A stretch of DNA of 36,810 bases, from contig CBFFRP010000542.1 in assembly GCA_965644295.1 (NCBI GenBank), positions 1-36,810 of the forward strand, given 5' to 3'. Source of the DNA: Paraphysomonas bandaiensis (taxonomy: Eukaryota > Protista > Chrysophyceae). The notes below the pieces were generated by a model. It was given only the letters and a program-made list of their open reading frames with translations, was not told where the DNA came from and searched no databases. This document shows, in pieces, positions 751-36,810 of the stretch; within the stretch, counting starts at the first letter, position 1, and each line of letters starts with the position of its first letter. A program made the translations under genes and the position numbers.

Positions 751-2553
751 ATGTCTACTCCTAGTGGCAAAAGGACCAGCAAGAAGCCGTCCACTGCTCC
801 ACGGCGTCCTAAACCAGTGGTACAGGAGGACTCACCAGATAAAATAGATGAAAGTCAATACGAAGAAGCGCCCATGATGCCTTCACCTTCTGCCCCAGCA
901 TCCTCAGCAACCCAACAGATTCTGGACTCAGTACAGGAGATCCAAGATACCCTGGGACAAGTAGCCTTTGCGATATCCAACCTAGACAGTAGGGTACAAG
1001 CTCTGGAGAGTTCTAAGAGAGCAGATACACCTGATTCACCAGACACCCAGAGTGATGACACACCTGATTCATTCAGCAGCAAGGGCATTAAAGCAAATAC
1101 CACACCCAGGGGAGTCACTAAGCGTGCTAAGAAAGACCGACCAAAACCCCGTTATTCCACTTTAGGAGATCTGGCTACATTCAGGAGATTGCCAGAGAAG
1201 AAAGAGCAACTGAGTGAGGAGAGCTCCGACTCAGAGCTTGAGGAAGAGGCAGAAGAACATTTGGGGCGTCTTGCCAGTGTTTTTGGAGAGAAACGTCCAG
1301 GAAAGTTCTTCCGGAATTTGAAACGCAGCGCCAAGGTGGCCCAAGCTAAGACTGTCAATATAACTAGGCTGGAGAAGAAGTGTCACGTCAGGATTGAGAC
1401 ATTCAAACTTGGTAGAGTTTCAAGGGCGATCAAGGAGATTCTGGATTTCCAAGAAGAGGAAGAAACAGAAGTCCGCATCCAGAAAGTTTTATCTAGAAAC
1501 CTGAAGGATCACTTGCGTTCCGTCTATGATATTCAACACGCAGAATTAGCTAGCATGGACATATCTGACCTCATGAGAATCGTAGCCCTAGAGACGAAAG
1601 TTTTCAGCTGTGTTGGGTTTTACAACGAGCTGAAAGAATCTCTCAGCCATATGAAGGTCATGGAGTGGGACAATGTCAACGCTGTCAATTTTGAAGCCTT
1701 CTATTTTCAACAACTTCGTTTGATAGAATCCTTTAAAAGGATGTTGTCTATCATGTTGGAAAATGAAAGCAACAGGCGTTGGTGTCCACAGGCTGATGAC
1801 AAGGAATACGGCCTTATTAGGCTATTTAAAACCCTGAACGACGTCACATATGTGAAATTTGTTCTAGGTTGTATTCCGAAGAAGAAGTTCGACTTTATGG
1901 AAGACTTCTTCAAACTATATACGGAGGTACTGTTAGACCATTACCAGATCACGATTGCTTATAAACAGTTGCCCTTCAAAGCAACCGTGCAACATCAGGC
2001 GAAGTATGAGGAATACATGAAGCGCAAGCGTGAAATGTTTTCTAGACCTAAGCCTGGAGTGGCAAAGAATTCCACTAGCACCCACTCTTCTACCAGGTTA
2101 TTTAACATGGAAGAGGAACAGGCTTCTTTTTCTTCAAATGAATTTTCTCATGATGAAGAAGATTTATGGGATGCCTATGGGGATACATGGAAAAGCAACA
2201 ACCACAGTACCGATGTTCCTACTGGCGGCAAACCTAATGGCGAGCCAGCGACCGAAACTTCTGAAGAGAAAGATACATCCGACTCAGAAGGAGCTTTGCA
2301 AGCTATGGATGGCCAGAATCCATCTCATAAACCCAAACAAGAGAAGTATGGGTGCATGAGAAAAATCATGTATGGCAAGTGCGACAAGAGTGATTGTCGT
2401 TATAGCCATAATCCTAGAGCTCTCGCCAATACCGCTTCGGAATTGGCTGAGAAATCCCAAGCTTATTTGAAGACCACTTCTTCAACTTCGGGGTCTCAGG
2501 ATAAACCTCCTGCTATTTTAAGGAGAGATCGCTTCGGCGACTCTCGTCCTTGA
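751..2553 (+). CDS. gag: Gag of element A (600 aa), N-terminal coiled coil, C-terminal CCCH zinc finger
   Basis: Lies upstream of the protease and aligns with ORF 34096-35565 (ETKVFS/ETKVLS, WDNV/WKSV, CP...KEYG/CP...KEFG). C-x8-C-x4-C-x3-H at 2353-2409. Confidence 0.85.
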   Translation: MSTPSGKRTSKKPSTAPRRPKPVVQEDSPDKIDESQYEEAPMMPSPSAPASSATQQILDSVQEIQDTLGQVAFAISNLDSRVQALESSKRADTPDSPDTQSDDTPDSFSSKGIKANTTPRGVTKRAKKDRPKPRYSTLGDLATFRRLPEKKEQLSEESSDSELEEEAEEHLGRLASVFGEKRPGKFFRNLKRSAKVAQAKTVNITRLEKKCHVRIETFKLGRVSRAIKEILDFQEEEETEVRIQKVLSRNLKDHLRSVYDIQHAELASMDISDLMRIVALETKVFSCVGFYNELKESLSHMKVMEWDNVNAVNFEAFYFQQLRLIESFKRMLSIMLENESNRRWCPQADDKEYGLIRLFKTLNDVTYVKFVLGCIPKKKFDFMEDFFKLYTEVLLDHYQITIAYKQLPFKATVQHQAKYEEYMKRKREMFSRPKPGVAKNSTSTHSSTRLFNMEEEQASFSSNEFSHDEEDLWDAYGDTWKSNNHSTDVPTGGKPNGEPATETSEEKDTSDSEGALQAMDGQNPSHKPKQEKYGCMRKIMYGKCDKSDCRYSHNPRALANTASELAEKSQAYLKTTSSTSGSQDKPPAILRRDRFGDSRP

Positions 2554-3207
2554 GATAAGGAGGTTAACATGATTGAGGACCTAGAAGAACATGTGATCAG
2601 TGTTTGTGATGGGAATGATGATTGTGATTATCTCCCAGAGGCTAAAACATTGAATACTACTTCTTCAAAGGTCCATTTCAAGGATGGAGCTAAGCTGTAT
2701 GCTTCATATCCTTCAGCCAAGAAATTTTCATCAGCACATACTGTAGGTAGAGTAATTATAGACAAGAAGTTCGGAGTGGAAGAATTAGTGAAAGTTTTAT
2801 GTGACACAGGAGCCCTATCCGCTAACTACGTAGCACGTGATCTTGTGGATAGATTGCGTACCAAGCTAGAACCTAGCAGGTTCTACAAGGTCAAACACCG
2901 TGTGGTTTTGGCAGACAGTAGAACCGTAAAGGATCTTGACGAAGGGGTTCGATTGAACTTAGTGTTTACCGATCCCAAGAGTCACACTTACCAGTACACT
3001 GGTGAGTTCATCGTGATCGACATGTCATCTAATGACATTATTTTGGGACTACCAGCCCTCACTGGGAAGCTATACCCTTTCATGTGTGCTGTCATGGAGC
3101 AGGCCCATGAGAATCATCTCGAAGATTCGGCTCAAGGGAACCATAATTTGAGTTACCTCCTCCTCGAGAACCTCCAGACAAACCATCTCCCCTCCCTTCG
3201 TCTCTGA
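2554..3207 (+). pseudogene. pol: Truncated pol of element A: aspartic protease only
   Basis: DTGA catalytic motif and IILG motif. In frame with gag after a TGA; first ATG at 2569. The last ~15 codons run into unrelated sequence. Confidence 0.85.
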
Positions 3208-9935: not shown

Positions 9936-9944
9936 TATAAACAG

Positions 9945-13106: not shown

Positions 13107-13110
13107 AAAC

Positions 13111-14254
13111 TGTAACCCTGGGGGTTTATATAGTAGCAAGTGTAGTAGTGAAATAGGGTATTCAACAACAAGAAGAGAGTCAACAACAGAAGAAGGACAG
13201 CAAACAGTACAAGATAATTATTTACGAAGGAAGTGCAAACATCTAGCCACGAGTCACGGAATTACAACAAGCCATTCACACTGAAGTGCATACTTGCGGC
13301 TACTCTAGGCAGTTATTAATATCACGACACTCAAAACACGTTACCCAGTATCTCTACTACTTGCAATACATGTGAAGCCAGCCGACTGCACCTGTTGTTT
13401 TACGACGTAGAGGCAATAAGGGCAATGGAGAGAGACTTAGGTAGCATCAACGTGATGTACACACAATTCTCTCTGCATCATCCTCAGAACAGCATAAGAA
13501 GGGATCTTCAGATGTTGCTAGTACATCCTGAACATAAATGTCTCAAGTTAAGTGCAGAACTATGGATGTACACAGCCCAATACCTCTGTGAGCTGCATTT
13601 TCATGATGGTGCTCTGGATGTGGAGATGAGCAGGAGTTAGGACCATTCAAGAGCATACTATAGACGCTATGCATGGTGATGCTGCTAAGCAGGCATAGTG
13701 GGTGGCTATTATGGCAAGCGTGTGGCTTAAAGAGGAATATATGGAGAGAGTAAAGATGCAATAAGTTTTATATGAGTTTAGGGAGTATGATAAGAGCAGT
13801 AGACTATCAGCGAATACGGTATCACGTTACTCATTTTAGTTAGCTGTTTTTCAGTTTTATCACTATGGTTTTATTTCAGTTTTATGCGTAGTTTCAGTTT
13901 TATGCGCAGTTATTCAGTTTCATACGCTGTTATTCAGTTTTGTTTTATTGTCATAATACGTGTGGTATACACGGTGTATGCAAGAATGCATGCGGTGTGG
14001 TGTGTGTGATATAAAATGAACTTGGTTCATTCTGTAGATGCGTACCATTCTATATGTTATTCCTTGCATGTCATTGTTTTAAGTTACTTGACACTGTCTT
14101 AACAGCGATCTTTATTCTTAGAGGGAATACTGCGCGGCGTTATCTAGCGGATATCGTTGACCGTGTTGGGTGATTTAACAGTAATAATAAGTGTTTACTC
14201 ACACCTTATTATATATTTTGTTGGGAGCAAACCCGCAAGTCTGGTTTGTGCATA
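13111..14254 (+). repeat. Element B 5' LTR (TGTAAC...TGCATA)
   Basis: Repeat of 19455-20598; identical ORF translations in the track. Confidence 0.95.
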
Positions 14255-14511
14255 GTAATATTACTACTAGTCCCATAAGGCCTTTTATATTGCGTAGTAG
14301 TGTACTAGATAATTATCATTTATATTGGAAGTCATTGACCATTGTGGGGGCGAAGTTTGAAGCAACAATATCTCATCTTGTACTGTGCCTGCGGACAAGC
14401 ACGTCAAGACAGTAGATTTGTTACAGAGAGCTTAGCATTCACATAGGACAAAGACAACCACCAGTAGCTAGTCTGATAGTAAGATACAATTGTCTTAGCA
14501 TATAGACAGTA

Positions 14512-15426
14512 ATGGATGTCAATCAAGACGAAGCCACAGACCTGCAGCGTCTAATGCAGGGATTCGTAGAGCAAATTACAGGCATGGTAAATACTCTAAC
14601 TGAGACAGTAGCTGGGGTAAAAGATGACGTAGCTGGGCTCAAGCACGACGTAGCTGAGGTCAGCGATGAGCTCAAGGAATTGAGAGTAAGAATAGCTGTC
14701 TTGGAAGGATCGTACTCATTTCCACAACCCCTTGAAAATTCTCCAGCTGCAGTTTCGAAGTCAGTGAATGATGCTTCTGCAGGACAAGATGTTTGTGCTG
14801 CAAAAGAGCCCTTGAACATTAATATTGAAAATTTAAATTCTACCAGTGTGGAGTGCATGTTGGAACAAGAAACTGTCGTTTGTACTGAGGATAAAGAGAT
14901 GACCGAAAAGTCTTCTGAAATTCATAATGAGGATTCGGAATATGCCGAAAAGGAAGCTTTGATTGCGGTTATTGATTCTCAGGTTACTCCACTGGGTGAA
15001 ACTTTGATTGAAGAACTTAGACATCCAGAATTTCTTTCTGAGAAGTCCAAGTCTACTCAACAAAATGACTCAAAAGATGCAGGGTGTTCTGTTGTTAAGA
15101 CTGTAAAGGTCATTTCAGTGAATCAGCTTTCAGTTGAAAACCATACTGTCAACGACGATATTGACGGTGACACAATTGTCATGTCAACACATCAATCAGC
15201 CCTGCCATCGAAGGCTGTTGTTACTCCCTTAAGCTATCTTCTGGTTATGCCTGGACGAGTTATGGGAAAGCATTTGACATTGTTGAGTCATCTTGAAGTG
15301 GTTAATCTTCTTTACACCAAAATGATGTTTGAGGAACCATGCTTGTGTTTTAAAGAACTTGTACAGCGCGATGAGCATGGCCCTGGACCGCCTTTTGTCA
15401 CTTCGGTGAATCTATTTCAATTTTAA
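14512..15426 (+). CDS. Gag-position ORF of element B (304 aa); N-terminal coiled coil resembles the lineage Gag, remainder divergent
   Basis: LRVRIAVLEGS resembles LDSRVQALESS (A) and TASRVDNLESR (C). No capsid-like core or zinc finger recognised. Confidence 0.55.
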   Translation: MDVNQDEATDLQRLMQGFVEQITGMVNTLTETVAGVKDDVAGLKHDVAEVSDELKELRVRIAVLEGSYSFPQPLENSPAAVSKSVNDASAGQDVCAAKEPLNINIENLNSTSVECMLEQETVVCTEDKEMTEKSSEIHNEDSEYAEKEALIAVIDSQVTPLGETLIEELRHPEFLSEKSKSTQQNDSKDAGCSVVKTVKVISVNQLSVENHTVNDDIDGDTIVMSTHQSALPSKAVVTPLSYLLVMPGRVMGKHLTLLSHLEVVNLLYTKMMFEEPCLCFKELVQRDEHGPGPPFVTSVNLFQF

Positions 15427-16791
15427 AGAGAACCTATTGGGATGAAGATTGGCCGTACCCGATGTTGATGTTGTATTATTGTTGTTATTGGAGACACGTT
15501 ACCATCAGGGTGCCAATTCATTTCTTTTGATGAGAAGGTGATAGTATTGTTTGTGACGAACGGGTTCATCAGTTTCTAAATCAAAGGATTCGTTATTCAA
15601 TGCTTGTGAGGGAAATGTTGTATCGTATATCGTAAATATTTTATTCAATATAATGTCAGTTAAAATTCAGTCATTATTATATTATATGCTTGAGGAGAGG
15701 AGTGTCTACACGCGGTTACATTTTCAATGTAGCATTGAGGAAAGATGTTTCTTCGCTGGATGTCCATTGTGTAATTCATGATTCGTTGATCAATGTAGAT
15801 ACGGGAGTCGGTAGTGAATGTGTGCAGTTCATGTCTCAGAACAATATTATCAAAGGCTATATGGACTCAAGGACAACTGTTGTATACAATCTTTGTATAT
15901 ATTATGGTGTGAAGACTGCTAAATGGCTTGGTGATTCATCCGAAATATATATAAGATTGGATTGAGTTTTGAGAAGTTTGAATGTGTATATATATTCCAG
16001 AAGCTATTATTTATCATACTTATATCTAATATTTTGATCATTGAGAATGCATCGTCAATGCCAGTGATTATTGCAAATTGAGGATCAGTTGTTGTTATTT
16101 GATTTTGAGAAAGTCTTCCAGAGTTATTTTGAGAATTCTGTTTAAATATTGATATCAGAGTGGTCAATGGGCTCAATGATGTACTGCCATACTGTTTAGT
16201 TTCTTTCAATGATTGCTACAAGAGGAATTTGATTCTGGAGTTTGTTGAAAATGTTTCAAACGTGTTACGGATCAAAATGCGAGTCTTGTCAGTCTCGTAC
16301 GAATGTTCTGGTGACATCATTAAAATGAATCATTCTGAGTTGCCATCACTTGTTCGATTTATATAATTCAATCTACGGTCAGTTACGTACATATGGATCT
16401 TCTGTTGTGCAGTTTGTATTGACTGAGTTGGATTATCTATTGTTGTGAGTTGCAAACTGGGATAAACTGAGAGTAGTCGGTTTTCTGTGTGAGAGAGAGT
16501 GATTTGAACATTCATCATTTTCATCAGGAATTATCAACAATTACGTTGCTCGTCATTGATGGGTGGGATATACGGTTGGAATTCAGAAAGTGATACGAGT
16601 AATAAAACCTTGTACGCTAAAGGAAGGAGCTTGTGAGTATACCTCCTATATGCCTATAATCTATTTTGTCGAGCGTTGTATTCGAATATCTTTCAACATA
16701 TATTCGATTTAAGCAAGTGGAGTGTGATGTTTCTCAATACGGAGTTGTTACGGATTCCAATGAATTCAGTGATTGAGACATATATATAGTC

Positions 16792-19380
16792 ATGTTTGAC
16801 AACATGTTGATCTTAGCTGAAGACCCCGCTGATGCATACAAAAAGTTTGAAATGATAATTGACCGGTGTATTGAACGTAATGAAAAACTCAAGATGCCTA
16901 AGAGTTGGCTGGGATTCCGGGAAGTGAATTTCTTTGGCTACGTGTGCAGACACAAATCGTATGAGGTCAGTCCTGATAAGAAGGAAGCTTTGGCTAACAT
17001 TCCAATGCCTACGAGTACTAAGACGGCCAGAAGCTTACTAGGAAAAGGAGTTTTCTTCTCAGGGTTCACACCTAGATATTCTGACTTGGTAGGTCATCTT
17101 CCGGACATGACCAAGAAAACTTTCAACTGGGATAAATCTACATGGAAGCATGATTACGAAGAGGAGTATCGAAAATTCATAAAGGGTCTACAAGATGCCT
17201 GTGAGTTATTTTATCCCGACTATTCGTTAGAATGGATCCTAAGAACTGATGCTAGCGAGCTAGGAGTAGGAGCAGTATTATTACAGAAGAAAATTTTAGA
17301 GGATGGTACTGTTCAGTTACAACCAATAGCATTTATATCGAAAAAATTCTCAACGCAAGCACAACGATGGGCTACGATAGAGCAGGAAGGCTACGGTATC
17401 TATTATGCTGTCAGAAACCTCGCATATTATTTAGTGGGCAAGGAGTTTATTATTGAGACCGATCATAACAATTTAGTGTGGATGGAGGCATCTGAAGTAC
17501 CTAAAATTGTGAGATGGCGTATATACCTGCAATCGTTTAACTTTATGATTCGGCACATTCCAGGTTCTCAAAATTGGTTAGCAGATTGGCTCTCCAGAGC
17601 ACATAAGTTGCAACATTTGGCTGGTATATTTCCTGATGTGGACATTGAGGAATACATTGATGAAACTATGTTTGGCAACTTAGACATCTATCTTAACAAT
17701 TTTATGGATCCGGATGACAAGGAAGAAGAGTTGGAACCGTTGTATTTATCCAAAGAGGAAAGTTTTCAAGCAGTTCATAATGCCAGACAAGGTCACAAAG
17801 GAGCTTATGCCACGTGGGTAAAATTGAATAAGAAATGCCCGGGACACAGGATATCTTTTGAAGAAGTCACCGAGATGATCAATAAATGTCCCAACTGTGC
17901 TAAGACACGACTCGGAATGCAAGAAGCTTTGATAGCTATACCTCGCAGTTTAAAACCACCTTCAGCTCGTAGTGCCATCGGTATCGATGCAGTGGAAATT
18001 ACACCCCACGGTAAAGAAGGCTACACGCATATTAACGTGGTGGTAAATCTGTTTACAAAACATGTCTTCCTCGAACCAGTGAAGGGAGTCACTGCCATAA
18101 ATCTTGCTAATACTGTATGGAAGTATTGGAGTCAATTTGGTCATACTGATGTGATCATATCGGATCAAGGACCTGATCTAAAATCCCAATTATTTGACCA
18201 ACTTTGCTCATATATTGGTGTCAAACACACATTCAGCATAGCGGATAGACATGCCAACGGATGCGAGAGGATCATAGGAGAGGTAGTGCGGCATTTAAGA
18301 GCATTAGTATTTGATTACAGTGAGAAAGAAGAGAAGCGAGATGTATTTGAAGACCCCAGCTGGATTCCTACAGTGGCACATGTATTGAATTCTGAAGTAT
18401 CATCTGAAACGGGGTATTCGCCTTTTGAGTTAACATTTGGTTCTGAGAGTGAGAGGTATAACAATATGGGAAGGGATGAAGTACCAGAGAAAGCCCATGC
18501 TAGACTACATAAACTCAATGATAATCTAGCTCTGTTGCAACGCAGTTCGAGAGAATATCAAGATAAGTTGAAGGCCAAACGTTTCAGTAAAGGCATATCT
18601 CCTCAGCGACAGAATCAGTATCAGCCGGGCGACTTTGTTTTATTTGACAAAGGGGCCAAGGTTTACCCTAAAATGTCTCATAGATACCTAGGACCATTTC
18701 AGGTTATATCGCAATATAAGAATGATATTGACTGCAAACATTTGGTGACCGGAGTTGTAACAAAAGTAGATGTACGGGATGTAAAATTATATCCCGGAGA
18801 CAGGGAACAAGCCTATAAAATGGCTATGCGAGATCATGATCAGCATGAGATCGACACTATTTTATATTACACTGGAGACAGAGAACGGCGTTCAACAATG
18901 TTGTTTACAGTACGTTTCAAGGATGGAGATATCAGAGAGCTACCTTACAGCCAGGATTTATTTGATTCCATAGCCTATGAGGAATTCTGTAGCAGCAAGC
19001 CTTATCTACATCATCTTATTTATACCACGGATGGGGCCGCCAAATATATCAGTGAGAAGAGGAAGCAGTCAATAACTACGGTTCAACCGGGTGACGAGGT
19101 GTATGTAGATATCAGAGTATTCGGAGATGACTGGTATGATGCCCTACAACTACCAGATTCGCCCACTGTTACATATGTGATGCAATTTATGCTCACTCAC
19201 TGGTATCATAAAACCAGCAAGAAGCTAATTTCTGTCAAGAATCCCATGACCAAAGCCACATACAGATTTGATAACTACCATGTGAAATGTTTTGTACATC
19301 GCGACTTCGATCCGCCGACAACTATGGTACTGATAGATTCCGACTTTGCGCTACGTTTTCCCCAAGTCCATCAACATTAA
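16792..19380 (+). CDS. pol: Partial Pol of element B: RT from motif C onward, RNase H, integrase, GPF, chromo-like tail (862 aa)
   Basis: Colinear with element C Pol: LRTDAS, ETDHNNL, ADWLSR, HHCC, GIDAV, ISDQG, NGCER, GPFQV. Confidence 0.93.
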   Translation: MFDNMLILAEDPADAYKKFEMIIDRCIERNEKLKMPKSWLGFREVNFFGYVCRHKSYEVSPDKKEALANIPMPTSTKTARSLLGKGVFFSGFTPRYSDLVGHLPDMTKKTFNWDKSTWKHDYEEEYRKFIKGLQDACELFYPDYSLEWILRTDASELGVGAVLLQKKILEDGTVQLQPIAFISKKFSTQAQRWATIEQEGYGIYYAVRNLAYYLVGKEFIIETDHNNLVWMEASEVPKIVRWRIYLQSFNFMIRHIPGSQNWLADWLSRAHKLQHLAGIFPDVDIEEYIDETMFGNLDIYLNNFMDPDDKEEELEPLYLSKEESFQAVHNARQGHKGAYATWVKLNKKCPGHRISFEEVTEMINKCPNCAKTRLGMQEALIAIPRSLKPPSARSAIGIDAVEITPHGKEGYTHINVVVNLFTKHVFLEPVKGVTAINLANTVWKYWSQFGHTDVIISDQGPDLKSQLFDQLCSYIGVKHTFSIADRHANGCERIIGEVVRHLRALVFDYSEKEEKRDVFEDPSWIPTVAHVLNSEVSSETGYSPFELTFGSESERYNNMGRDEVPEKAHARLHKLNDNLALLQRSSREYQDKLKAKRFSKGISPQRQNQYQPGDFVLFDKGAKVYPKMSHRYLGPFQVISQYKNDIDCKHLVTGVVTKVDVRDVKLYPGDREQAYKMAMRDHDQHEIDTILYYTGDRERRSTMLFTVRFKDGDIRELPYSQDLFDSIAYEEFCSSKPYLHHLIYTTDGAAKYISEKRKQSITTVQPGDEVYVDIRVFGDDWYDALQLPDSPTVTYVMQFMLTHWYHKTSKKLISVKNPMTKATYRFDNYHVKCFVHRDFDPPTTMVLIDSDFALRFPQVHQH

Positions 19381-19416
19381 TTTTGACTTAGTTTTATACT
19401 GAGTTATATTATTATC

Positions 19417-19454
19417 GAAAAAAAAAAAAAAAAAAAAGAGAGGGAAAAAGGTAG
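19417..19454 (+). other. Polypurine tract of element B
   Basis: Long A run followed by GAGAGGGAAAAAGGTAG immediately before the 3' LTR. Confidence 0.9.
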
Positions 19455-20598
19455 TGTAACCCTGGGGGTTTATATAGTAGCAAGTGTAGTAGTGAAATAG
19501 GGTATTCAACAACAAGAAGAGAGTCAACAACAGAAGAAGGACAGCAAACAGTACAAGATAATTATTTACGAAGGAAGTGCAAACATCTAGCCACGAGTCA
19601 CGGAATTACAACAAGCCATTCACACTGAAGTGCATACTTGCGGCTACTCTAGGCAGTTATTAATATCACGACACTCAAAACACGTTACCCAGTATCTCTA
19701 CTACTTGCAATACATGTGAAGCCAGCCGACTGCACCTGTTGTTTTACGACGTAGAGGCAATAAGGGCAATGGAGAGAGACTTAGGTAGCATCAACGTGAT
19801 GTACACACAATTCTCTCTGCATCATCCTCAGAACAGCATAAGAAGGGATCTTCAGATGTTGCTAGTACATCCTGAACATAAATGTCTCAAGTTAAGTGCA
19901 GAACTATGGATGTACACAGCCCAATACCTCTGTGAGCTGCATTTTCATGATGGTGCTCTGGATGTGGAGATGAGCAGGAGTTAGGACCATTCAAGAGCAT
20001 ACTATAGACGCTATGCATGGTGATGCTGCTAAGCAGGCATAGTGGGTGGCTATTATGGCAAGCGTGTGGCTTAAAGAGGAATATATGGAGAGAGTAAAGA
20101 TGCAATAAGTTTTATATGAGTTTAGGGAGTATGATAAGAGCAGTAGACTATCAGCGAATACGGTATCACGTTACTCATTTTAGTTAGCTGTTTTTCAGTT
20201 TTATCACTATGGTTTTATTTCAGTTTTATGCGTAGTTTCAGTTTTATGCGCAGTTATTCAGTTTCATACGCTGTTATTCAGTTTTGTTTTATTGTCATAA
20301 TACGTGTGGTATACACGGTGTATGCAAGAATGCATGCGGTGTGGTGTGTGTGATATAAAATGAACTTGGTTCATTCTGTAGATGCGTACCATTCTATATG
20401 TTATTCCTTGCATGTCATTGTTTTAAGTTACTTGACACTGTCTTAACAGCGATCTTTATTCTTAGAGGGAATACTGCGCGGCGTTATCTAGCGGATATCG
20501 TTGACCGTGTTGGGTGATTTAACAGTAATAATAAGTGTTTACTCACACCTTATTATATATTTTGTTGGGAGCAAACCCGCAAGTCTGGTTTGTGCATA
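19455..20598 (+). repeat. Element B 3' LTR
   Basis: Repeat of 13111-14254; follows the polypurine tract and is followed by the TSD. Confidence 0.95.
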
Positions 20599-29160: not shown

Positions 29161-30123
29161 AAAGACAGACCCCCAGTCTAAAGACTCCTCCTCATACACA
29201 GGACATTGAATGCATCCACAACCGTACAATATGCTCATACATGTACTACACTACATACGATTCATATCCTACATCGTTTATAGTCAAAAACGCCCTGAAA
29301 TACGCCTAAATAGGTCCTTTCCAAAAACCTCCGATTTTTGAGTCCCAAAACCCCAAAAATCCCCAATTTTTTGAGAATTGCAGAAAATCGCCGATTTTCG
29401 AGCCACAAACACCCAAAATGACAATATTCGAATCCACAAAAATTGCAAGCACATTTCATGACAACGTGAAATACACAATCGCCAACTCATGCATAATACC
29501 GACAAAATGCAATCGGGTTCAAAAGCTTACAACCGAACGGTTAAATATCATTTCCTTGCAAGAGTGTGTACTTTAGACTGGACCATACAAATACACTCAT
29601 ATTCAGATCACTAACATGCCCATGACACCTCTGCATCTGCGTCCAATGGCACCTTACGAATTCCTCCCCATTCCGGAGAAAATCAACGGTGTATGGCAAT
29701 GGAGGAATATTCGTATATCAGAATCCAGAACAATGATCAAGCACATAGAGCTGTTCAAAACCATCAGAAAGCTTCTCATAATGATGGGTGGACTACGAAT
29801 ATCGCACATGCGGTACCAATCAATGCTTCCTGACCCAAAACGCTATGACACCGACTACCGTATGGATATAGGCGTAAACCGACGGGTAGCAATCGCGTAG
29901 ATCAAAGAAAACGTGTGTTCGAGGGTAAATCCTAGTTGTCTGTCGTCTTGCCCTCGTAATAATAATCTGTATCTCTTGTTGTCACCAATCTTATACAAAA
30001 CAAGCTACATATACCCTACATATTATGTTATCATATCGTTATTGCATTAATATAGTTATCAATATTATTATGATGATGTCATTAAACGTGTTAAAGGGTG
30101 TTATAAAAGCCCACGGCTTTACA
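29161..30123 (-). repeat. Element C 3' LTR (appears to lack its last ~52 nt)
   Basis: Starts TGTAAAGCC after the polypurine tract. Identity with the 5' LTR stops at 29161/35863. Confidence 0.92.
29616..29900 (+). CDS. 94-aa antisense ORF within element C 3' LTR, unknown function
   Basis: Intact ATG-initiated ORF in both LTRs. A possible decayed counterpart lies at a similar position in the element B LTR. Confidence 0.4.
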   Translation: MPMTPLHLRPMAPYEFLPIPEKINGVWQWRNIRISESRTMIKHIELFKTIRKLLIMMGGLRISHMRYQSMLPDPKRYDTDYRMDIGVNRRVAIA

Positions 30124-30142
30124 TTACCCTTTCTCCCCCCCC
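30124..30142 (-). other. Polypurine tract of element C
   Basis: GGGGGGGGAGAAAGGGTAA directly before the 3' LTR. Confidence 0.9.
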
Positions 30143-30153
30143 GGATGCCGTAG

Positions 30154-33100
30154 CTACTCCTGAATAATGTTGGGATAAGCCGCAGCGAGCGACGCATCAA
30201 CCAAAATCATGCGAGCAGGGTCAAAATCCTTCTGGGACCCCCAACAATAGACCAAATAGTTGTCGAAGGCATAGTTGGAACCGTTGAGATTAAAACGGGC
30301 GCTAATCTTGCGTTTGGAATTCTTGTGATACCAATGGGTGTACGTGAATTCCATGACATACGCGGCCGTGGCATAATCCGGTAAACCAAGACTCTCGTAC
30401 CACAGGTCACCGTAGAACCTGAGATCAACATAGACAGTATCTCCAACCGACACTGTTGTGATATTCTCTTTCCTCATTGAAGAAATAAAACGCTTCGCAG
30501 TAAACGAGTCGTATGCGAGGTGCCGCAAGTAAGGCCTAGACTCACAAAAATCGTAATATGCCTCACACTGAATATCCGGTGTCCATGGAATGTCCAAGAT
30601 ATCGCCGTCCGCATACTTCACCTTGAAGACCATCGTAGATTTGGTTCGTGAATCTCCCGTATATGAAAGAATCTCCTCCACCTTAAATTGTTCATGGTCT
30701 CGCATCGCCGCTTCAATAGCCGATTCCTTATCTCCGAAAAATGGCTCAAGATCAGAGACAGAGTATTCCCGAATTCCCCCGGTAAGAATATTACGAATTT
30801 GAACATCGTTCTTGTATTGTCGCACCACTTCGAAAGGACCCTTCATCCTCGAGGATAATTTCGGATGTGGTTTAGCACCAGCGTCGAACATAACAAAATC
30901 GCCTGGACAATACTGGTTTTGTTTGGCAGGATCCAAACCCGCTTCCGCTCGTTTCTCAACTAGAGACTTCTGGTAGTCTGCTGATATCTGGCGAACTAGA
31001 GCTAAGTAATCGTTCAGCCTTTTCAACAGCTGATGAGACGGATCATTGTCTCTCCCCTGGGCAGCCAAAAGATTCTTATAGATAGAATCCTGGGACCCAA
31101 ACGTCAGTTCGAATGCAGAATACCCCGTCTCACTACTCTCGTGGGTATTCAGAATGAACATGATAGTGGCAAGTAACAGTTCGTCCTCCAAAACAGCATC
31201 CGCCTCAATTCGCTTGTCAAAACAAATAGCACGGATGTGACGAACCACTTCCTTAATAATACGCTCACACCCATTGACATGCCTGTTGGCGATACTAAAA
31301 ACATGACGGAGTCCTGACAACTTAACCAGCTCTGCGAAAAGCTCTGATTTGAGATCCGGACCCATATCTGATATAATCATATCCGTGAGCCCGTATGTAC
31401 ACCAGCACTTCCATACTGCTGTAGCCAAATTGATAGCCGTCATTCCTTTCACCGCATATAGGTACACCAATTTCGTAAACAAATTAACCATGACCACAAT
31501 ATGCGTGTAACCAGATTTAGAAACAGGTGTAATAGCAACCGCGTCAATTCCCAAAGCACTCCTGGAATGAGGCGGTTTTAAATGTCTAGTGATAGGAATC
31601 AATCGCTGCTTCAGCTCTCGCCTATTCTTCTGACAGTTGATACATTCGTCCACGAAGTCTGCAACCACCTTGAAAGGCACGCCGTGTCCCGGAAATTGCC
31701 TACACAGACGTTTCCACGTCTCTTTCGCACCCCAGTGTCCTGCTTGCGCGTTGTGAACCTCTTTGATAGCCTGATAATAATCTATCCTCTGTACCTCCGT
31801 AGGCGGCGCGATCTCTTGAACGTCGTCCTCAAAATCGTCTTTTTCAAAGATGTTATGCAGTGTCACGAAGTTCACTTCATCTGAGTCGAAATCGTCACTT
31901 TCGTCCACAAATCCGGACAAATACAGCAATCTTGACAAGCAATCCGCAACCACATTGTTCTTCCCTGGGATATGACGAATCAAAAAGTCAAAATCCTGCA
32001 AATAAATTCTCCATCGAATTATCTTCGCAACTTCTGATGCCTCCATCCACACAAGGTTGTTGTGGTCCGTCTCGATTGTAAATTTCTTTCCTCTCAGATA
32101 AAACGAAAATTTCTTGACTGAATAGAATATACCAAAACCCTCCTTCTCAATAGTACACCACTTCAAGGCTTGCTCTGACAATTTCTTGGAACAGATAGCA
32201 ATAGTTTGCTGTTGAATCGGACTAGACCCAGTTCCCTCAACAGTCTGGAAAAGAATGCCTGCCACTCCATAGTCACTAGCATCTGTCCTAAGTGTCCACT
32301 CAAGATCATAATTCGGATAAAACAAAGCACAAGACTGTTGCAAACCACTCTTATAGTTTTCAAACTCCTGCCTATAATCGTGCTGCCATGTCGTTTCTTC
32401 CCAATTAAAACTACTCTTAGTCATATCCGTAAGATGTTTAACCAAATCTGAGTAATTCTGAACAAATGGAGCAAAGAATACTCCCAGACCCAACAAAGAT
32501 CTAATCTTCTTACATCTATTTCCATTCTCTGGAAAAGGAATCTTCAATAAAGCCTCTTTCCTATCGTCCGTGAGCTCGAAACTATTGTGCCTTACCAAAT
32601 AGCCAAAAAACTTGATCTCCCTAAATCCTAACCAGGTCTTTGCAAATTTCAACACAACTCCATGTTCAATGCATCTATCCAGGAAAATCTCCAGCTTCTT
32701 ATACGCATCATCAAAATCATGTGCCAATAACAGAACATTATCAAATATACACAGCGCCCATTCCAGATCTCCAAACAATTTGACTACCGCTTCTTGCAAC
32801 ACACTAATCCCTGGAGACACTCCCTCCGGAAGGAATAAAGGCTGAAATTGGCCCCACGGTGTTTGAACTGACAATTTTTCAGATGTGTTCTCATGCAACC
32901 TGATCTGATGGAACGCATTCGTGAGGTCAATGTCCATAAATATCTTATAGCCAATAATACGATCCAACTCATGTCTTACATTAGGAACTGTATAGTGTGG
33001 ACTTGGAATGTACTTGTTGATTTGCACGTAATCCCCACAAATCCTAATAAAAGGTTTCGTGGCTTTTGGCGCGATCACCAAACAAGAAGCCCACGGCGAC

Positions 33101-34092
33101 CTACTAGGAACATAGATGTAACCACACAGTCTCCTAAACTCCTTCTCCGCATCCTCATATAATCTAGGATTTACGGGTCTTGCCTTCGGCTTGATCCTAG
33201 GAGGCAAATTCTCAGCGAACTTGATGTTCAACGGATCCACTCCTTTTATACCTTCCCACCGCTCTGGAACAAATACCTCTACTCCCTTAGTCCTCAATAA
33301 CTCCAGCACCGGTCGCGCTGCTGAGAACTCTGGAGACACGTGCTCACCAAACATATCCTCGAACTCGCTCAAAGCTTCCTCTCTAGTCTTTCCAAGAAAA
33401 CTTGAGGCAAATCCGAACTGCGAAGGGTCCGGAACATCCAATTCTTCAGGTGCTACCTCCCTACTACTGTCACACCACGGCTGCAATAATTCTTCAACCG
33501 CATTCAACAACAAATCATCCTCGGTAACATCGTCCTCACGCCTTTTAATAAAACTTACTTCTGATTCAATTCGTTCAATAGTCCTTCCTTTAAGCATAAA
33601 TAGAAAATAATCCCATAGATCCTTAACGATAGCCGGAAGTCCAATAATAATATCGTTGCTACCCATATCAGCAACAATGAAATCCCCGTCATATATCACG
33701 AACTCTCCCTTGGAGTCTTCTCTCTCAAACCTCAATTTTAATTTCACTACAAAACTACACTTCATTCTCGACGTTTTATCGGCAAATCCTATAACTGTTT
33801 CTTTTTTTATGACTTTGTTTTCACACACATGATTTCTAAACGTCTCAAACAAATCCTTGGAAATGAAGTTAGATGTTAGGGCTCCAGTGTCGAACAATAT
33901 TCCACGCACAGATATTATATAGTTATCATCACATACAATGCTTCCCCCAGAATGAGCCAATGTCAAGTCTTTTCGTTCTCGCGTATTACAGACATTCATC
34001 AAATTTCTGAGGAAAACTCGACTAACAGTCTCAGGATCATTCAAACCGTACAATATTTCTTCGTGATCCTGCGAACCATTAGCCTCGCACAT
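30154..34092 (-). CDS. pol: Pol of element C (1312 aa): protease, RT, RNase H, integrase, chromo-like tail
   Basis: FDTGA; SPWAS, RICGDY, DLTNAFHQI, CIFDN, FFGY; TDAS, TDH, ADCLSR; HHCC, D,D33E, GPF. Confidence 0.96.
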   Translation of the reverse strand: MCEANGSQDHEEILYGLNDPETVSRVFLRNLMNVCNTRERKDLTLAHSGGSIVCDDNYIISVRGILFDTGALTSNFISKDLFETFRNHVCENKVIKKETVIGFADKTSRMKCSFVVKLKLRFEREDSKGEFVIYDGDFIVADMGSNDIIIGLPAIVKDLWDYFLFMLKGRTIERIESEVSFIKRREDDVTEDDLLLNAVEELLQPWCDSSREVAPEELDVPDPSQFGFASSFLGKTREEALSEFEDMFGEHVSPEFSAARPVLELLRTKGVEVFVPERWEGIKGVDPLNIKFAENLPPRIKPKARPVNPRLYEDAEKEFRRLCGYIYVPSRSPWASCLVIAPKATKPFIRICGDYVQINKYIPSPHYTVPNVRHELDRIIGYKIFMDIDLTNAFHQIRLHENTSEKLSVQTPWGQFQPLFLPEGVSPGISVLQEAVVKLFGDLEWALCIFDNVLLLAHDFDDAYKKLEIFLDRCIEHGVVLKFAKTWLGFREIKFFGYLVRHNSFELTDDRKEALLKIPFPENGNRCKKIRSLLGLGVFFAPFVQNYSDLVKHLTDMTKSSFNWEETTWQHDYRQEFENYKSGLQQSCALFYPNYDLEWTLRTDASDYGVAGILFQTVEGTGSSPIQQQTIAICSKKLSEQALKWCTIEKEGFGIFYSVKKFSFYLRGKKFTIETDHNNLVWMEASEVAKIIRWRIYLQDFDFLIRHIPGKNNVVADCLSRLLYLSGFVDESDDFDSDEVNFVTLHNIFEKDDFEDDVQEIAPPTEVQRIDYYQAIKEVHNAQAGHWGAKETWKRLCRQFPGHGVPFKVVADFVDECINCQKNRRELKQRLIPITRHLKPPHSRSALGIDAVAITPVSKSGYTHIVVMVNLFTKLVYLYAVKGMTAINLATAVWKCWCTYGLTDMIISDMGPDLKSELFAELVKLSGLRHVFSIANRHVNGCERIIKEVVRHIRAICFDKRIEADAVLEDELLLATIMFILNTHESSETGYSAFELTFGSQDSIYKNLLAAQGRDNDPSHQLLKRLNDYLALVRQISADYQKSLVEKRAEAGLDPAKQNQYCPGDFVMFDAGAKPHPKLSSRMKGPFEVVRQYKNDVQIRNILTGGIREYSVSDLEPFFGDKESAIEAAMRDHEQFKVEEILSYTGDSRTKSTMVFKVKYADGDILDIPWTPDIQCEAYYDFCESRPYLRHLAYDSFTAKRFISSMRKENITTVSVGDTVYVDLRFYGDLWYESLGLPDYATAAYVMEFTYTHWYHKNSKRKISARFNLNGSNYAFDNYLVYCWGSQKDFDPARMILVDASLAAAYPNIIQE

Positions 34093-34095
34093 TTG

Positions 34096-35565
34096 TCAAG
34101 TCACTCCACCAGGCCTCGGCAAAATCTTTCGCGGCCCTTTGGAATCATCTGCCATCATCTGAGACAGCTTCTTCATCATCCATTTCCGGGTTTCCGTTGC
34201 AACTGCTCCATTATGACCCTGGACATGCTTACATTCCTTCCCTTTGTAGCAGTTCCCATACAACGCATACGCAACGCAACCACGGGTTGGATTAACAGTC
34301 TTCTCTAGGTTCATCACCTGTTCTATAGCTTCCTTATCAGACTCTGGTTCGCCGAGCAACATCTCCTCAACCTCATTCTCGAAATCATCATCTGACATCC
34401 CGTCATCCTTGACCACAACTATCGGGTCAACCTCCTTGTCATCTAAATCACTGTAGAAATCATCCTCAACTCGGTCCGCAAACTGCACGTTGTTTAAAGA
34501 TTTCGGTTTCTCCTTTGCAACGTATCCATTGTCCCGATTCCTCGAACTCCTTTGAATTTGCTTCCTACTGAAATCGGACCCTTCATAAGGCACCAATCTG
34601 ATGTTCTTGGACGCCTCATAATGCTCACTCGCCTTGGAAACGTATGTATCCAGAAACTCTTCAACATTACCATAATTAGTATCCGTCACCCTTGGAATCT
34701 CAGCCAGAACTCGTTTGTTGTAAGACTCGTCGATCAACTCCAAAAATACTTGAGCCGATCCAAACTCTTTTCCTCCAACCGGCGGACACTTAGTACTATT
34801 GGCCTCCATCATGATAGTAAACGTACGCATAAAAATACTCTTTCGCTTCAAAATCTCTTGAAAAAACAGCTCATGTGTATTCGGCCGCACTGATTTCCAA
34901 TCCAGTGGCTTAAAATATCTCAGCGCGTATCGCAAAGTCTCAATGAACTCAACTTTGGACAACACCTTGGTCTCCTTAGCCATCATCTCACAGAATTTCT
35001 GAGCACTCAACTTAACAAACATTTTATCCGTCAAGCTATTGTTGAACATAAGCAGGTTCCGAACACGCCTGCTAACTATCTGGGCTGGCTCAAGCTTAAT
35101 CCCATTGATCTGTTCATATTCAAACCATTGGATGATAAACTTTGTAAAATCACTAAGCTCCATCGAATCCAGAAAAATATGCTTATGGGATGGCTTTTCA
35201 ACATTGATGATGACATGCTTTGGAACCTCCATTCCCTCTGAAGACTCAGCCTCCCTCATGAATACAGATGTCCTTCGCTCTTTCTTCTTGCCTTTGTCGT
35301 CGGCAGCCCTGCCACTCTCTCTGGTATGTCCCTGCTGCTCTTCACGCTGGTCACGGATGGCCTCATCTACTTCCTTCTGAGCTTCCTCCAGCTCATTAAC
35401 TAAAACTTCTTCATTAATAGACATTCTGGACTCCAGATTATCTACCCTACTGGCAGTTGCTACACACAACTTAGTGACGTTCTCCAAATTGAGAGCAATT
35501 CCCCGTAACATTTCCTTAACTTCATCTAACTCAGATGAACCAACAGGACCCTCCGAATCAGACAT
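34096..35565 (-). CDS. gag: Gag of element C (489 aa) with C-terminal CCCH-like finger
   Basis: Homologous to 751-2553; CVAYALYGNCYKGKECKHVQGH at 34213-34278. Confidence 0.88.
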   Translation of the reverse strand: MSDSEGPVGSSELDEVKEMLRGIALNLENVTKLCVATASRVDNLESRMSINEEVLVNELEEAQKEVDEAIRDQREEQQGHTRESGRAADDKGKKKERRTSVFMREAESSEGMEVPKHVIINVEKPSHKHIFLDSMELSDFTKFIIQWFEYEQINGIKLEPAQIVSRRVRNLLMFNNSLTDKMFVKLSAQKFCEMMAKETKVLSKVEFIETLRYALRYFKPLDWKSVRPNTHELFFQEILKRKSIFMRTFTIMMEANSTKCPPVGGKEFGSAQVFLELIDESYNKRVLAEIPRVTDTNYGNVEEFLDTYVSKASEHYEASKNIRLVPYEGSDFSRKQIQRSSRNRDNGYVAKEKPKSLNNVQFADRVEDDFYSDLDDKEVDPIVVVKDDGMSDDDFENEVEEMLLGEPESDKEAIEQVMNLEKTVNPTRGCVAYALYGNCYKGKECKHVQGHNGAVATETRKWMMKKLSQMMADDSKGPRKILPRPGGVT

Positions 35566-35810
35566 TTCGATATATATCTATAAACTACAATAATGATATC
35601 TTCACTTACGTGTTTTACCGTAAGTAAATTTACTATGAACAACTCAGGTCTTGCAACCTAAGATCACTGAAAAGATATGAAATGGTTGTTTATCGAAACA
35701 ACAAAACAGAAAGCTATAATAATAACTCTTTAAGAAACCAACAGCCAGAAACACAAGCTCCCCTGTATCCTGCAATCTAAAGCTCCCAATAGACAGATCA
35801 GTCAACCAAC

Positions 35811-36810
35811 TATGTTAATTTCATAGAGAATTATTATTAAAACTAAAGTTACAAGCGAAACAAAAGACAGACCCCCAGTCTAAAGACTCCTCCTCATACA
35901 CAGGACATTGAATGCATCCACAACCGTACAATATGCTCATACATGTACTACACTACATACGATTCATATCCTACATCGTTTATAGTCAAAAACGCCCTGA
36001 AATACGCCTAAATAGGTCCTTTCCAAAAACCTCCGATTTTTGAGTCCCAAAACCCCAAAAATCCCCAATTTTTTGAGAATTGCAGAAAATCGCCGATTTT
36101 CGAGCCACAAACACCCAAAATGACAATATTCGAATCCACAAAAATTGCAAGCACATTTCATGACAACGTGAAATACACAATCGCCAACTCATGCATAATA
36201 CCGACAAAATGCAATCGGGTTCAAAAGCTTACAACCGAACGGTTAAATATCATTTCCTTGCAAGAGTGTGTACTTTAGACTGGACCATACAAATACACTC
36301 ATATTCAGATCACTAACATGCCCATGACACCTCTGCATCTGCGTCCAATGGCACCTTACGAATTCCTCCCCATTCCGGAGAAAATCAACGGTGTATGGCA
36401 ATGGAGGAATATTCGTATATCAGAATCCAGAACAATGATCAAGCACATAGAGCTGTTCAAAACCATCAGAAAGCTTCTCATAATGATGGGTGGACTACGA
36501 ATATCGCACATGCGGTACCAATCAATGCTTCCTGACCCAAAACGCTATGACACCGACTACCGTATGGATATAGGCGTAAACCGACGGGTAGCAATCGCGT
36601 AGATCAAAGAAAACGTGTGTTCGAGGGTAAATCCTAGTTGTCTGTCGTCTTGCCCTCGTAATAATAATCTGTATCTCTTGTTGTCACCAATCTTATACAA
36701 AACAAGCTACATATACCCTACATATTATGTTATCATATCGTTATTGCATTAATATAGTTATCAATATTATTATGATGATGTCATTAAACGTGTTAAAGGG
36801 TGTTATAAAA
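35811..36810 (-). repeat. Element C 5' LTR (its first ~15 nt lie beyond the window)
   Basis: 35863-36810 repeats 29161-30108. The inner end at 35811 (...TTAACATA|GT) is inferred by analogy with elements A and B. Confidence 0.85.
36318..36602 (+). CDS. Second copy of the 94-aa antisense LTR ORF
   Basis: Identical translation to 29616-29900. Confidence 0.4.
   Translation: MPMTPLHLRPMAPYEFLPIPEKINGVWQWRNIRISESRTMIKHIELFKTIRKLLIMMGGLRISHMRYQSMLPDPKRYDTDYRMDIGVNRRVAIA

What the first reader, a model, noticed from the sequence alone, without database searches (positions are those of the whole stretch)
29161..36810. Candidate new Ty3/gypsy lineage with several replication hallmarks altered together
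Seen: three diverged members (A, B, C) share a package of non-canonical traits, each visible in at least two of them. These are FDN at the RT active site, D,D33E integrase, a CCCH-type Gag finger, one in-frame UGA between gag and pol, a self-complementary sequence at the PBS position, CATA LTR ends and a two-domain integrase tail. Element C has intact ORFs, and B and C have LTR pairs that look identical, so the lineage was recently mobile. Inference: the traits are lineage adaptations in priming, catalysis and integration rather than decay. Novelty cannot be confirmed without a search.
Basis: partly seen in the sequence, partly recalled or inferred. Interest (0 to 1): 0.88.

Follow-up and report, generated by a model that had tools for sequence, protein, structure and literature searches.

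The report
Chrysophyte gypsy clade with odd hallmarks
Element C belongs to a large, apparently undescribed group of Ty3/gypsy retrotransposons of golden algae. Their reverse transcriptase always lacks one of the three 'essential' catalytic aspartates, and their primer site is a perfect palindrome rather than a tRNA match, so they are a natural test case for rewired reverse transcription.

Summary
Element C (29161-36810, minus strand) has open gag (489 aa) and pol (1312 aa) ORFs in one frame, separated by a single UGA. Aligned to Ty3, the YLDD box reads IFDN and the integrase D-E spacing is 33.

These traits are not decay:
- Every relative examined has xxDN at the YxDD position: 120 proteins, 95 loci, and 145 of the 150 best 50%-identity cluster representatives. 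The 5 others are about 24-30% identical.
- All other catalytic residues are kept.
- C-family copies differ with dN/dS of 0.02-0.03 in pol.

Clade-wide traits are DN, a CCCH Gag finger with no CCHC, and a perfect 10-16 nt palindrome at the primer-binding position. The palindrome's sequence varies between subclades but its symmetry never does.

Sub-lineage traits are D33E (34 is commoner), CATA LTR ends (others end in CA) and the UGA (26 TGA, 5 TAG, 30 fused gag-pol).

Hosts are chrysophytes. The window's eL20 exon is 97% identical to Paraphysomonas, and relatives occur in Dinobryon, Pedospumella and Chlorochromonas.

Caveats:
- B is internally deleted.
- C's 3' LTR stops 229 bp short of the conserved CATA/palindrome junction.
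- Placement against GyDB/Repbase could not be done, and no publication was found.

The parts
35863..36810 (-). Element C, 5' LTR. Its start is cut off by the window end.
   Evidence: It is 100% identical to 29161-30108 over 948 nt.
35634..35862 (-). U5-like stretch of C ending in ...GTTCATA. It is present only on the 5' side.
   Evidence: It aligns with the LTR ends of B, L010 and L011, for example at the ACTGATCT block and the CATA end. There is no second copy in the window.
35624..35633 (.). Perfect palindrome GTAAATTTAC at the primer-binding position of C, 68 nt upstream of the gag ATG.
   Evidence: The same motif directly abuts the LTR end in L010-L013.
34096..35565 (-). C gag ORF (489 aa), ending in TGA at 34096-34098. 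The next codon is CAA, followed by ATG.
   Evidence: Pfam gives no hit.
34213..34278 (-). CCCH-type finger of C Gag, with spacing C-x8-C-x5-C-x5-H.
30154..34092 (-). C pol ORF (1312 aa), in the gag frame. Domain order is protease (DTG, aa 68-70), RT, RNase H, integrase.
   Evidence: Pfam hits to RVT_1, RT_RNaseH, Integrase_H2C2 and rve. Match to the Ty3 Gag-Pol polyprotein, E 2.9e-46.
32737..32748 (-). RT motif C reading IFDN where Ty3 reads YLDD.
31264..31368 (-). Integrase catalytic D909 to E943, with 33 residues between them.
30157..30765 (-). Integrase tail (aa 1110-1312). It holds a chromo-like domain, a helical linker and a second beta-barrel domain (aa 1207-1312, nt 30157-30474). A GPF motif lies just upstream at 30826-30840.
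   Evidence: AlphaFold2 models with pLDDT 94.6 and 95.4. hhalign to an ORF with a Pfam Chromo hit on record (precomputed gene table): E 1.2e-4, probability 55%. Foldseek gives only weak Tudor/PWWP/SAWADEE hits.
30127..30142 (-). Polypurine tract of C (G8 AGAAAGGG).
29161..30123 (-). C 3' LTR. It starts with TGTAAAGCC (by analogy with B and L010) and ends at ...GTCTGTCTTT without the CATA end.
13111..20598 (+). Element B, nested in a copia element. LTRs lie at 13111-14254 and 19455-20598, running TGTAAC...TGCATA. The target-site duplication is AAAC. The palindrome is at 14255-14264, MFDN at 16792-16803 and the PPT at 19425-19451. The element is internally deleted.
   Evidence: Removing B plus 4 bp leaves one open 1596-aa copia ORF.
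1..3207 (+). Element A, a 5' fragment. The LTR end lies at 1-223 (...CACA), the palindrome at 224-235, gag at 751-2553 with a CCCH finger at 2353-2409, TGA at 2551-2553, and the protease ORF at 2569-3207. Everything beyond that is lost.

Best explanation
C is a young member of a large Ty3/gypsy clade of the chromovirus type that lives in chrysophytes (golden algae). Its ORFs are intact. The clade has a fixed set of departures from the retroelement canon.

Shown:
- The RT works with two catalytic aspartates, one in motif A and the first one in motif C. The second Asp of YxDD is always Asn.
- Gag carries a CCCH finger instead of a CCHC knuckle.
- The position just 3' of the 5' LTR holds a perfect 10-16 nt palindrome and no tRNA complement.
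- In the A/B/C branch, gag and pol share one frame and are separated by one UGA.
- Integration makes 4-bp target duplications. The integrase has a D-E spacing of 33 or 34 and a conserved two-domain tail.

Inferred:
- The DN polymerase is catalytically competent, perhaps slower or Mn-preferring, as the Ty1 D211N mutant is in vitro.
- Pol is made by UGA readthrough driven by the codon after the stop, often CUA or CAA.
- Minus-strand synthesis is primed at the palindrome by self-complementary pairing, most simply between the two packaged genomic RNAs, with one cut at the 3' edge of the palindrome to give the 3'-OH. This would explain why the LTR ends exactly at the palindrome.
- The chromo-like domain plus the barrel domain tether integrase to chromatin.
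For: - Membership in Ty3/gypsy: Ty3 homology and domain order.
- DN invariant: 120 of 120 proteins; all 93 motif-C calls made on the 95 loci held, 80 of them fetched with patterns that do not touch motif C; 145 of the 150 best 50%-identity cluster representatives seen from a divergent member, with the 5 DD ones being 24-30% identical multi-RT proteins.
- Other catalytic residues are conserved.
- dN/dS in pol is 0.02-0.03 between C and copies from other samples.
- LTRs are identical in B and C.
- CCCH is found in nearly all Gags and CCHC in none.
- Palindrome: 34 of 39 elements have a perfect palindrome of at least 10 nt 25-135 nt upstream of the gag ATG, against 12.7% of control windows. The other 5 are four whose palindrome lies 351-512 nt upstream (L012, L014, L026, L069) and L067, which has none. 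At least 12 different palindrome sequences occur, all perfectly symmetric.
- The LTR ends exactly at the palindrome in B, L010, L011, L012 and L013. B's limits are confirmed by restoration of the copia ORF.
- Stop codon: 26 TGA against 5 TAG and 0 TAA. The next codon is CTA in 12 of the 26 TGA cases, and C follows TGA in 21 of 26.
- Experimental precedent: Ty1 RT with the second Asp of YXDD changed to Asn still polymerises, with kpol down 223-fold and a Mn2+ preference. Its transposition is partly rescued by second-site RNase H changes (PMC2148107).
- Hosts.
Against: - No biochemical data exist for any member.
- In C itself the LTR identity stops 229 nt before the palindrome.
- No conserved hairpin lies next to the palindrome, and no second copy of it occurs in the LTR, so the priming chemistry is unsupported beyond geometry.
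- No significantly stable RNA structure follows the UGA; z-scores run from -1.7 to 0.
- The chromodomain assignment is weak: no Pfam hit and hhalign probability 55%.
- The second tail domain has no significant structural match.
- Phylogenetic placement against named clades was not possible.
Confidence: 0.75

Rival explanations
1. The clade is real but already catalogued, for example as Repbase 'Gypsy-N' families of stramenopiles or a named GyDB clade. The finding would then be a new member and not a new lineage.
For: A few members are already in public protein sets, all unnamed: EukProt gene models of Dinobryon, Pedospumella and Chlorochromonas, plus the NCBI 'hypothetical protein' OXE36858.1. 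Repbase and GyDB could not be searched.
Against: Six full-text searches found no paper describing DN reverse transcriptases, CCCH Gag or palindromic PBS in LTR elements, and none on chrysophyte gypsy elements. No database source gives any of the hits a family name.
Confidence: 0.2
2. The palindrome is not the primer site. It would be a dimerisation or packaging signal, or a protein-binding site, and priming would use another, unidentified primer.
For: In C the LTR repeat ends 229 nt upstream of the palindrome. Palindromic dimer-initiation sites are known in retroviral leaders (own knowledge). No cleavage activity or hairpin could be inferred.
Against: In all five elements with readable LTR pairs the LTR ends at the base before the palindrome, which is where a primer's 3' end must sit. 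No element has a TGG-type tRNA complement there. C's LTR would otherwise end in TT, unlike every relative, whose LTRs end in CA or TA. That favours a truncated 3' LTR in C.
Confidence: 0.25
3. Pol is made by termination-reinitiation at an ATG close to the stop, not by readthrough.
For: In C the ATG follows the stop after one codon, and in A after five.
Against: In relatives the first ATG lies up to 30-34 codons downstream, inside conserved pol sequence. The stop is TGA in 26 of 31 cases, with CTA, CAA or CGG as the next codon in 16 of those 26. These are the classical leaky contexts (the contexts are own knowledge).
Confidence: 0.1
4. The DN RT is dead as encoded. Either the elements ride on RTs of co-resident YxDD elements, or the Asn codon is edited back to Asp in the RNA.
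For: A canonical YLDD chromovirus fragment lies in the same assembly as relatives (L011 765-1310). AAY to GAY is a single A-to-G change.
Against: Pol is under strong purifying selection (dN/dS 0.02-0.03). All other RT, RNase H and integrase catalytic residues are kept in 118-120 of 120 proteins. This would not be expected for an unused enzyme. No editing system of that kind is known in stramenopiles (own knowledge).
Confidence: 0.03
5. The traits are decay in dead copies.
For: A is a fragment and B is deleted.
Against: See the conservation statistics and the open 1312-aa ORF above.
Confidence: 0.01

Closest known systems
Ty3 of Saccharomyces cerevisiae and Ty3/gypsy (Metaviridae) elements generally
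   Same: Gag, then protease-RT-RNase H-integrase. The RT-RH region aligns with Ty3 over 427 residues, E 2.9e-46 for the polyprotein. Also shared are the integrase HHCC and DDE, LTRs, a PPT and a short target duplication.
   Different: YLDD becomes IFDN. The D-E spacing is 33 or 34. Gag has a CCCH finger instead of CCHC. There is an in-frame UGA instead of a +1 frameshift. There is no tRNA PBS.
Chromoviruses (Ty3/gypsy elements with an integrase chromodomain and a GPY/F module)
   Same: A GPF/GPY motif is followed by a three-strand-plus-helix domain. This domain aligns with the chromodomain of a canonical chromovirus ORF from a relative's contig.
   Different: The domain falls below Pfam Chromo detection. 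It is followed by a conserved extra beta-barrel domain of about 105 aa with no significant PDB match.
Tf1/sushi group self-priming elements
   Same: No tRNA complement at the PBS; priming by the element's own RNA is the likeliest model.
   Different: In Tf1 the PBS pairs with the first 11 nt of the transcript (own knowledge). Here the site is self-complementary, and no second copy exists in the LTR.
Ty1 RT D211N mutant (second Asp of YXDD changed to Asn)
   Same: It has the same substitution at the same position. The mutant still polymerises in vitro (PMC2148107).
   Different: In Ty1 it is a laboratory mutation that abolishes transposition unless suppressed. Here it is the wild type of a whole clade that is under purifying selection.
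Gammaretrovirus and plant-virus stop-codon readthrough
   Same: A single in-frame stop lies between gag and pol, and the codons after it are of the leaky type (CUA, CAA, CGG).
   Different: The stop is UGA rather than the UAG of MLV. No downstream pseudoknot or stable structure was detected. About half of the clade has no stop at all.
Motif C variants of viral RNA polymerases (GDN of Mononegavirales, ADN of birnaviruses)
   Same: These are natural polymerases with Asp-Asn in motif C. This rests on my own knowledge and was not tested here.
   Different: They are RNA-dependent RNA polymerases, not reverse transcriptases, and are unrelated in lineage.

Membership tests
Ty3/gypsy LTR retrotransposons (Metaviridae) | pol domain order protease-RT-RNase H-integrase | tested here: met
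   Pfam domains in that order. DTG at aa 68, RT at 370-498, RH at 569-701, IN at 774-936.
Ty3/gypsy LTR retrotransposons (Metaviridae) | RT-RH sequence closest to Ty3-type RTs among solved structures | tested here: met
   The best PDB matches are Ty3 entries 7q5b and 4ol8, E 2.9e-46 and 2.6e-39, ahead of CaMV and retroviral RTs.
Ty3/gypsy LTR retrotransposons (Metaviridae) | Flanking LTRs, a PPT and a 4-5 bp target duplication | tested here: met
   B has 1144-bp LTRs and TSD AAAC, and excising it restores the copia ORF. L011 has TSD GGCT and L012 has GCAA. C's TSD cannot be read because of the window end.
Ty3/gypsy LTR retrotransposons (Metaviridae) | Canonical RT motif C, Y-x-D-D | tested here: not met
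   IFDN in C and MFDN in B. xxDN in all 120 proteins, in all 93 motif-C calls made on the 95 loci held, and in 145 of 150 representatives.
Ty3/gypsy LTR retrotransposons (Metaviridae) | PBS complementary to a host tRNA 3' end (TGG...) | tested here: not met
   The sequence after the LTR is a palindrome of the GTAAATTTAC type. None of the junctions starts with TGG.
Chromoviruses | Chromodomain at the integrase C-terminus | tested here: inconclusive
   No Pfam Chromo hit in 115 tails. hhalign to an ORF with a Pfam Chromo hit on record (precomputed gene table) gives E 1.2e-4 and probability 55%. The model shows three strands plus a helix.
Chromoviruses | GPY/F module upstream of the chromodomain | tested here: met
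   GPF at aa 1085-1087 of C. G1085 and P1086 are invariant in 22 diverse members.
Chromoviruses | Placement inside the chromovirus branch of an RT/IN tree with GyDB references | not testable with these tools
Tf1/sushi self-priming group | PBS complementary to the 5' end of the element's own transcript | tested here: inconclusive
   No second copy of the palindrome occurs in the LTRs of B or C. The transcription start is unknown.
Readthrough-type gag-pol (as in gammaretroviruses) | One in-frame stop between gag and pol | tested here: met
   A, C and 24 further distinct elements have TGA, and 5 have TAG.
Readthrough-type gag-pol (as in gammaretroviruses) | Stimulatory RNA structure 3' of the stop | tested here: inconclusive
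   Folds of 100 nt after the stop in C, A, L010 and L004 give z-scores of -1.7, -1.1, -0.3 and 0.0. Pseudoknots are not modelled by the tool.

The most novel reading that the evidence does not exclude
A whole clade of LTR retrotransposons has abandoned tRNA priming. Instead it primes at a palindrome, by pairing between the two packaged genomes or another self-complementary mechanism. It did so together with a change of the polymerase active site from three to two aspartates, which would make the two changes mechanistically linked.
Probability: 0.35. Interest if true: 0.85.

Novelty: new variant of a known kind. Interest (0 to 1): 0.72.

Why it matters
The three aspartates of the RT active site are treated as universal, and loss of any one is used to call an RT dead. 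Here a diverse, selected and recently mobile clade shows that the second Asp of YxDD is dispensable in nature. The clade spans at least 145 clusters at 50% identity and occurs in marine and freshwater samples.

This matters for three reasons:
- It affects how retroelement ORFs are annotated as 'inactive'.
- It gives enzymologists a natural counterpart to the Ty1 D211N mutant.
- Together with the palindromic primer site, it points to a possibly new way of starting reverse transcription.

It also opens up the almost unstudied mobile-element content of chrysophytes.

Tried and rejected
- Placing the clade. A search from a divergent member (L072) aimed to find where DN ends. The 150 best representatives were still 145 DN, so the nearest YxDD outgroup was not reached.
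- Literature. Eight searches were run. One found the Ty1 D211N precedent and the others found nothing relevant.
- Resolving C's LTR end. Other C-family contigs (L001, L002, L015) are collapsed or tandem assemblies and give no 3' flank. The missing 229 nt occurs nowhere else in the window.
- A hairpin next to the palindrome. One is seen in A, B and C but not in 23 relatives, so it was rejected as a clade feature.
- A readthrough structure after the UGA. None was significant.
- Rfam and tRNA scans of the window found nothing.
- Foldseek on the whole tail and on domain 2 alone gave no match below E 0.02. Pfam on 115 tails gave only weak DUF7141 hits in 21 of them.
- UGA reassignment in the host was rejected because the 1312-aa pol and the 489-aa gag contain no internal TGA.
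Full report
**Anatomy of the window.** The window holds four LTR elements.
- A (1 to about 3207, plus strand) is a 5' fragment. It has the last 223 nt of an LTR, a 12-nt palindrome, a 600-aa gag, an in-frame TGA and a protease ORF. Homology to C then stops.
- A Ty1/copia element (9945-22951, minus strand) has 320-bp TG..CA LTRs and target duplication AACAG.
- B (13111-20598, plus strand) is inserted in that copia element. Its two 1144-bp LTRs are identical, run from TGTAAC to TGCATA, and are flanked by AAAC. Removing B plus one 4-bp duplication leaves a single open 1596-aa copia ORF, while duplications of 0, 2, 3, 5 or 6 bp do not. B's limits are therefore exact.
- C (29161-36810, minus strand) is the finding. 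It has gag at 35565-34096, pol at 34092-30154, a PPT at 30142-30127, a 3' LTR at 30123-29161, and a 5' LTR cut by the window end.

- Against Ty3, C's RT reads IFDN where Ty3 reads YLDD. The integrase has two one-residue gaps between the second Asp and the Glu, which gives D-33-E.
- B has MFDN and, by my count on the ORF printed, the same spacing.
- A and C have a CCCH-type finger near the Gag C-terminus. A has the classical C-x8-C-x4-C-x3-H. C has C-x8-C-x5-C-x5-H.
- In both A and C, gag and pol share a frame and are separated by one TGA.

**The traits are not decay.**
- The RT-RH part of C pol finds 801 proteins with E <= 1e-10 (90%-identity cluster representatives). All of the 120 best have xFDN.
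- A metagenome scan used peptide patterns that do not include motif C and fetched 80 loci at 32-53% identity. Counting the 15 loci fetched earlier, 95 loci were scored and gave 93 motif-C calls: IFDN 76, LFDN 10, IHDN 3, MWDN 2, AYDN 1, QFDN 1. None reads DD.
- Seen from one of the most divergent members (L072, MWDN), 145 of the 150 best 50%-identity cluster representatives are DN. The five DD proteins are long multi-RT products only 24-30% identical. The invariant feature is therefore Asp-Asn, not 'FDN'.
- In the same 120 proteins, RT motif A Asp, the four RNase H carboxylates, the integrase DDE and the HHCC are kept in 115-120 of 120, and protease DTG/DSG in 106 of 120 (12 lack that region).
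- C differs from copies in three other samples by 33-46 nucleotides in pol but only 3-4 amino acids, giving dN/dS of 0.02-0.03.
- An experimental precedent exists. Ty1 RT with the second Asp of YXDD changed to Asn still polymerises in vitro, with kpol down 223-fold and a Mn2+ preference. Its transposition defect is partly suppressed by changes in RNase H, and Ty3 RT is said to be similarly flexible (PMC2148107).

**Which traits are clade-wide and which are local.**
- A CCCH finger occurs in nearly every Gag, mostly as C-x8-C-x4-5-C-x3-H, and no CCHC was found.
- The D-E spacing in the loci is 34 in 73 cases, 33 in 15 and 35 in 4. Among the 120 closest proteins it is 33 in 77 and 34 in 40. D33E therefore marks C's neighbourhood only.
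- Of 65 distinct gag-pol junctions, 30 are fused single ORFs, 26 have an in-frame TGA, 5 a TAG and 4 are unclear. After TGA the next codon is CTA in 12, CAA in 3 and CGG in 1, and the next base is C in 21 of 26. These are the known leaky contexts (own knowledge). No stable structure follows the stop.
- LTR 3' ends are CA in 12 and TA in 10 of the 22 junctions with a GTA..TAC palindrome. CATA is therefore a local variant of CACA, and A itself ends in CACA.

**The primer site.** This is the most striking feature.
- In B, L010, L011, L012 and L013 the LTR ends at the base before a perfect palindrome.
- Across 39 elements with enough upstream sequence, 34 have a perfect palindrome of at least 10 nt lying 25-135 nt before the gag ATG. 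Only 12.7% of random windows from the same loci do. For 12 nt or more the figures are 79% against 5%.
- Four others have the palindrome further upstream, and only L067 has none.
- The sequence differs between subclades, with at least twelve versions of 10-16 nt. Examples are GTAAATTTAC, GTAATATTAC, GTAATTAATTAC, GTATTAATAC, CAATATTAATATTG and TAATATCGATATTA. The symmetry is always perfect.
- That pattern argues for selection on self-complementarity and against pairing with one fixed host RNA. None of the junctions starts with the TGG of a tRNA complement.
- I infer priming by pairing of the palindromes of two genomic RNAs, followed by a cut at the 3' edge. This is geometry, not evidence. No conserved neighbouring hairpin and no second copy in the LTR were found.

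**A problem in C.**
- The two LTR copies of C are identical only up to 29161/35863.
- The conserved end, ...GTTCATA plus GTAAATTTAC, lies at 35640-35624, at the usual 68 nt from the gag ATG.
- The 229 nt in between align with the LTR ends of B, L010 and L011.
- An LTR ending in TT would be unlike all relatives.
- I therefore think the 3' LTR of this copy has lost its last 229 bp. The available C-family contigs cannot settle this.

**The integrase tail.** It is conserved across the clade and folds with high confidence, pLDDT 94.6.
- The first domain, three strands plus a helix, aligns with the chromodomain of a canonical chromovirus ORF at E 1.2e-4 and probability 55%. It gets no Pfam Chromo hit.
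- The second domain, about 105 aa, is a beta-barrel with only weak Tudor/PWWP/SAWADEE-like matches at E >= 0.29.
- A chromatin-reading, targeting role is inferred and not shown.

**Host.**
- The first exon of the eL20 (RPL18a) gene was searched by reference as part of ORF 5951-6295. The exons were not joined.
- It is 97% identical to Paraphysomonas MMETSP1103 and 84-85% identical to other chrysophytes.
- Short RT fragments of the clade occur in EukProt gene sets of Pedospumella encystans (IHDN), Dinobryon pediforme (IFDN) and Chlorochromonas danica.
- Nothing in the window or the loci looked human.

**Novelty.** No database source gives any member a family name, and eight full-text searches found no description of these traits. 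Repbase and GyDB could not be queried, and no named reference sequences were available for a tree. I rate the finding as a new variant of a known kind, with high but not extreme interest.

Noticed in passing
window 9945-22951: A Ty1/copia element on the minus strand, with 320-bp TG..CA LTRs and TSD AACAG. It is split by B. Removing B plus 4 bp leaves one open 1596-aa ORF, so the copia element was intact when it was hit.
   Followed up: yes
L012 10047-11036 (-); also L011 10386-11165, L013 11733-12230, L014 5667-6224: Relatives of C carry 1.4-2.8 kb between pol and the 3' LTR, with an antisense ORF. In L012 this ORF has a SET (lysine methyltransferase) domain, Pfam E 4e-9. C and B lack this region.
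   Followed up: partly
window 9715-9987 (-): A 90-aa ORF with a weak Pfam Chromo hit (E 0.004), largely outside the copia 3' LTR and overlapping its last 43 nt. It is probably the tail of yet another element, into which the copia element inserted.
   Followed up: partly
window 8366-8820: A tandem array of a 28-bp unit, 16 copies at 96% match, in the intergenic stretch between the eL20 gene and the copia element.
   Followed up: no
window 4471-5641 (-), 5951-6136 (+), 24555-25040 (+): Host genes: polyprenyl (GGPP) synthase-like exons (named by eye from the ORF translations; not run against any family library), the first exon of ribosomal protein eL20, and a RING-finger ORF.
   Followed up: partly
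window 27000-29100: A block with about 51% GC and several minus-strand ORFs (146-227 aa) without Pfam hits, one of them containing an RNase H-like TDGS motif. It abuts the truncated end of C's 3' LTR and may be another mobile element.
   Followed up: no
L004 1-16438; L015 1-13933: Head-to-tail arrays (internal-LTR-internal) of clade members with periods of 8523 and 6715 bp. They could be real tandem copies or assembly of circular or collapsed forms.
   Followed up: no
protein P0471 (NCBI OXE36858.1): A clade RT fragment with IFDN is deposited as a hypothetical protein of a 'Phenylobacterium zucineum' MAG. This is presumably a eukaryotic contig mis-binned into a bacterial genome.
   Followed up: no
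L011 765-2989: A decayed chromovirus with canonical YLDD and a Pfam Chromo domain lies in the same assembly as DN-clade elements. DN and DD gypsy lineages therefore coexist in one host.
   Followed up: partly
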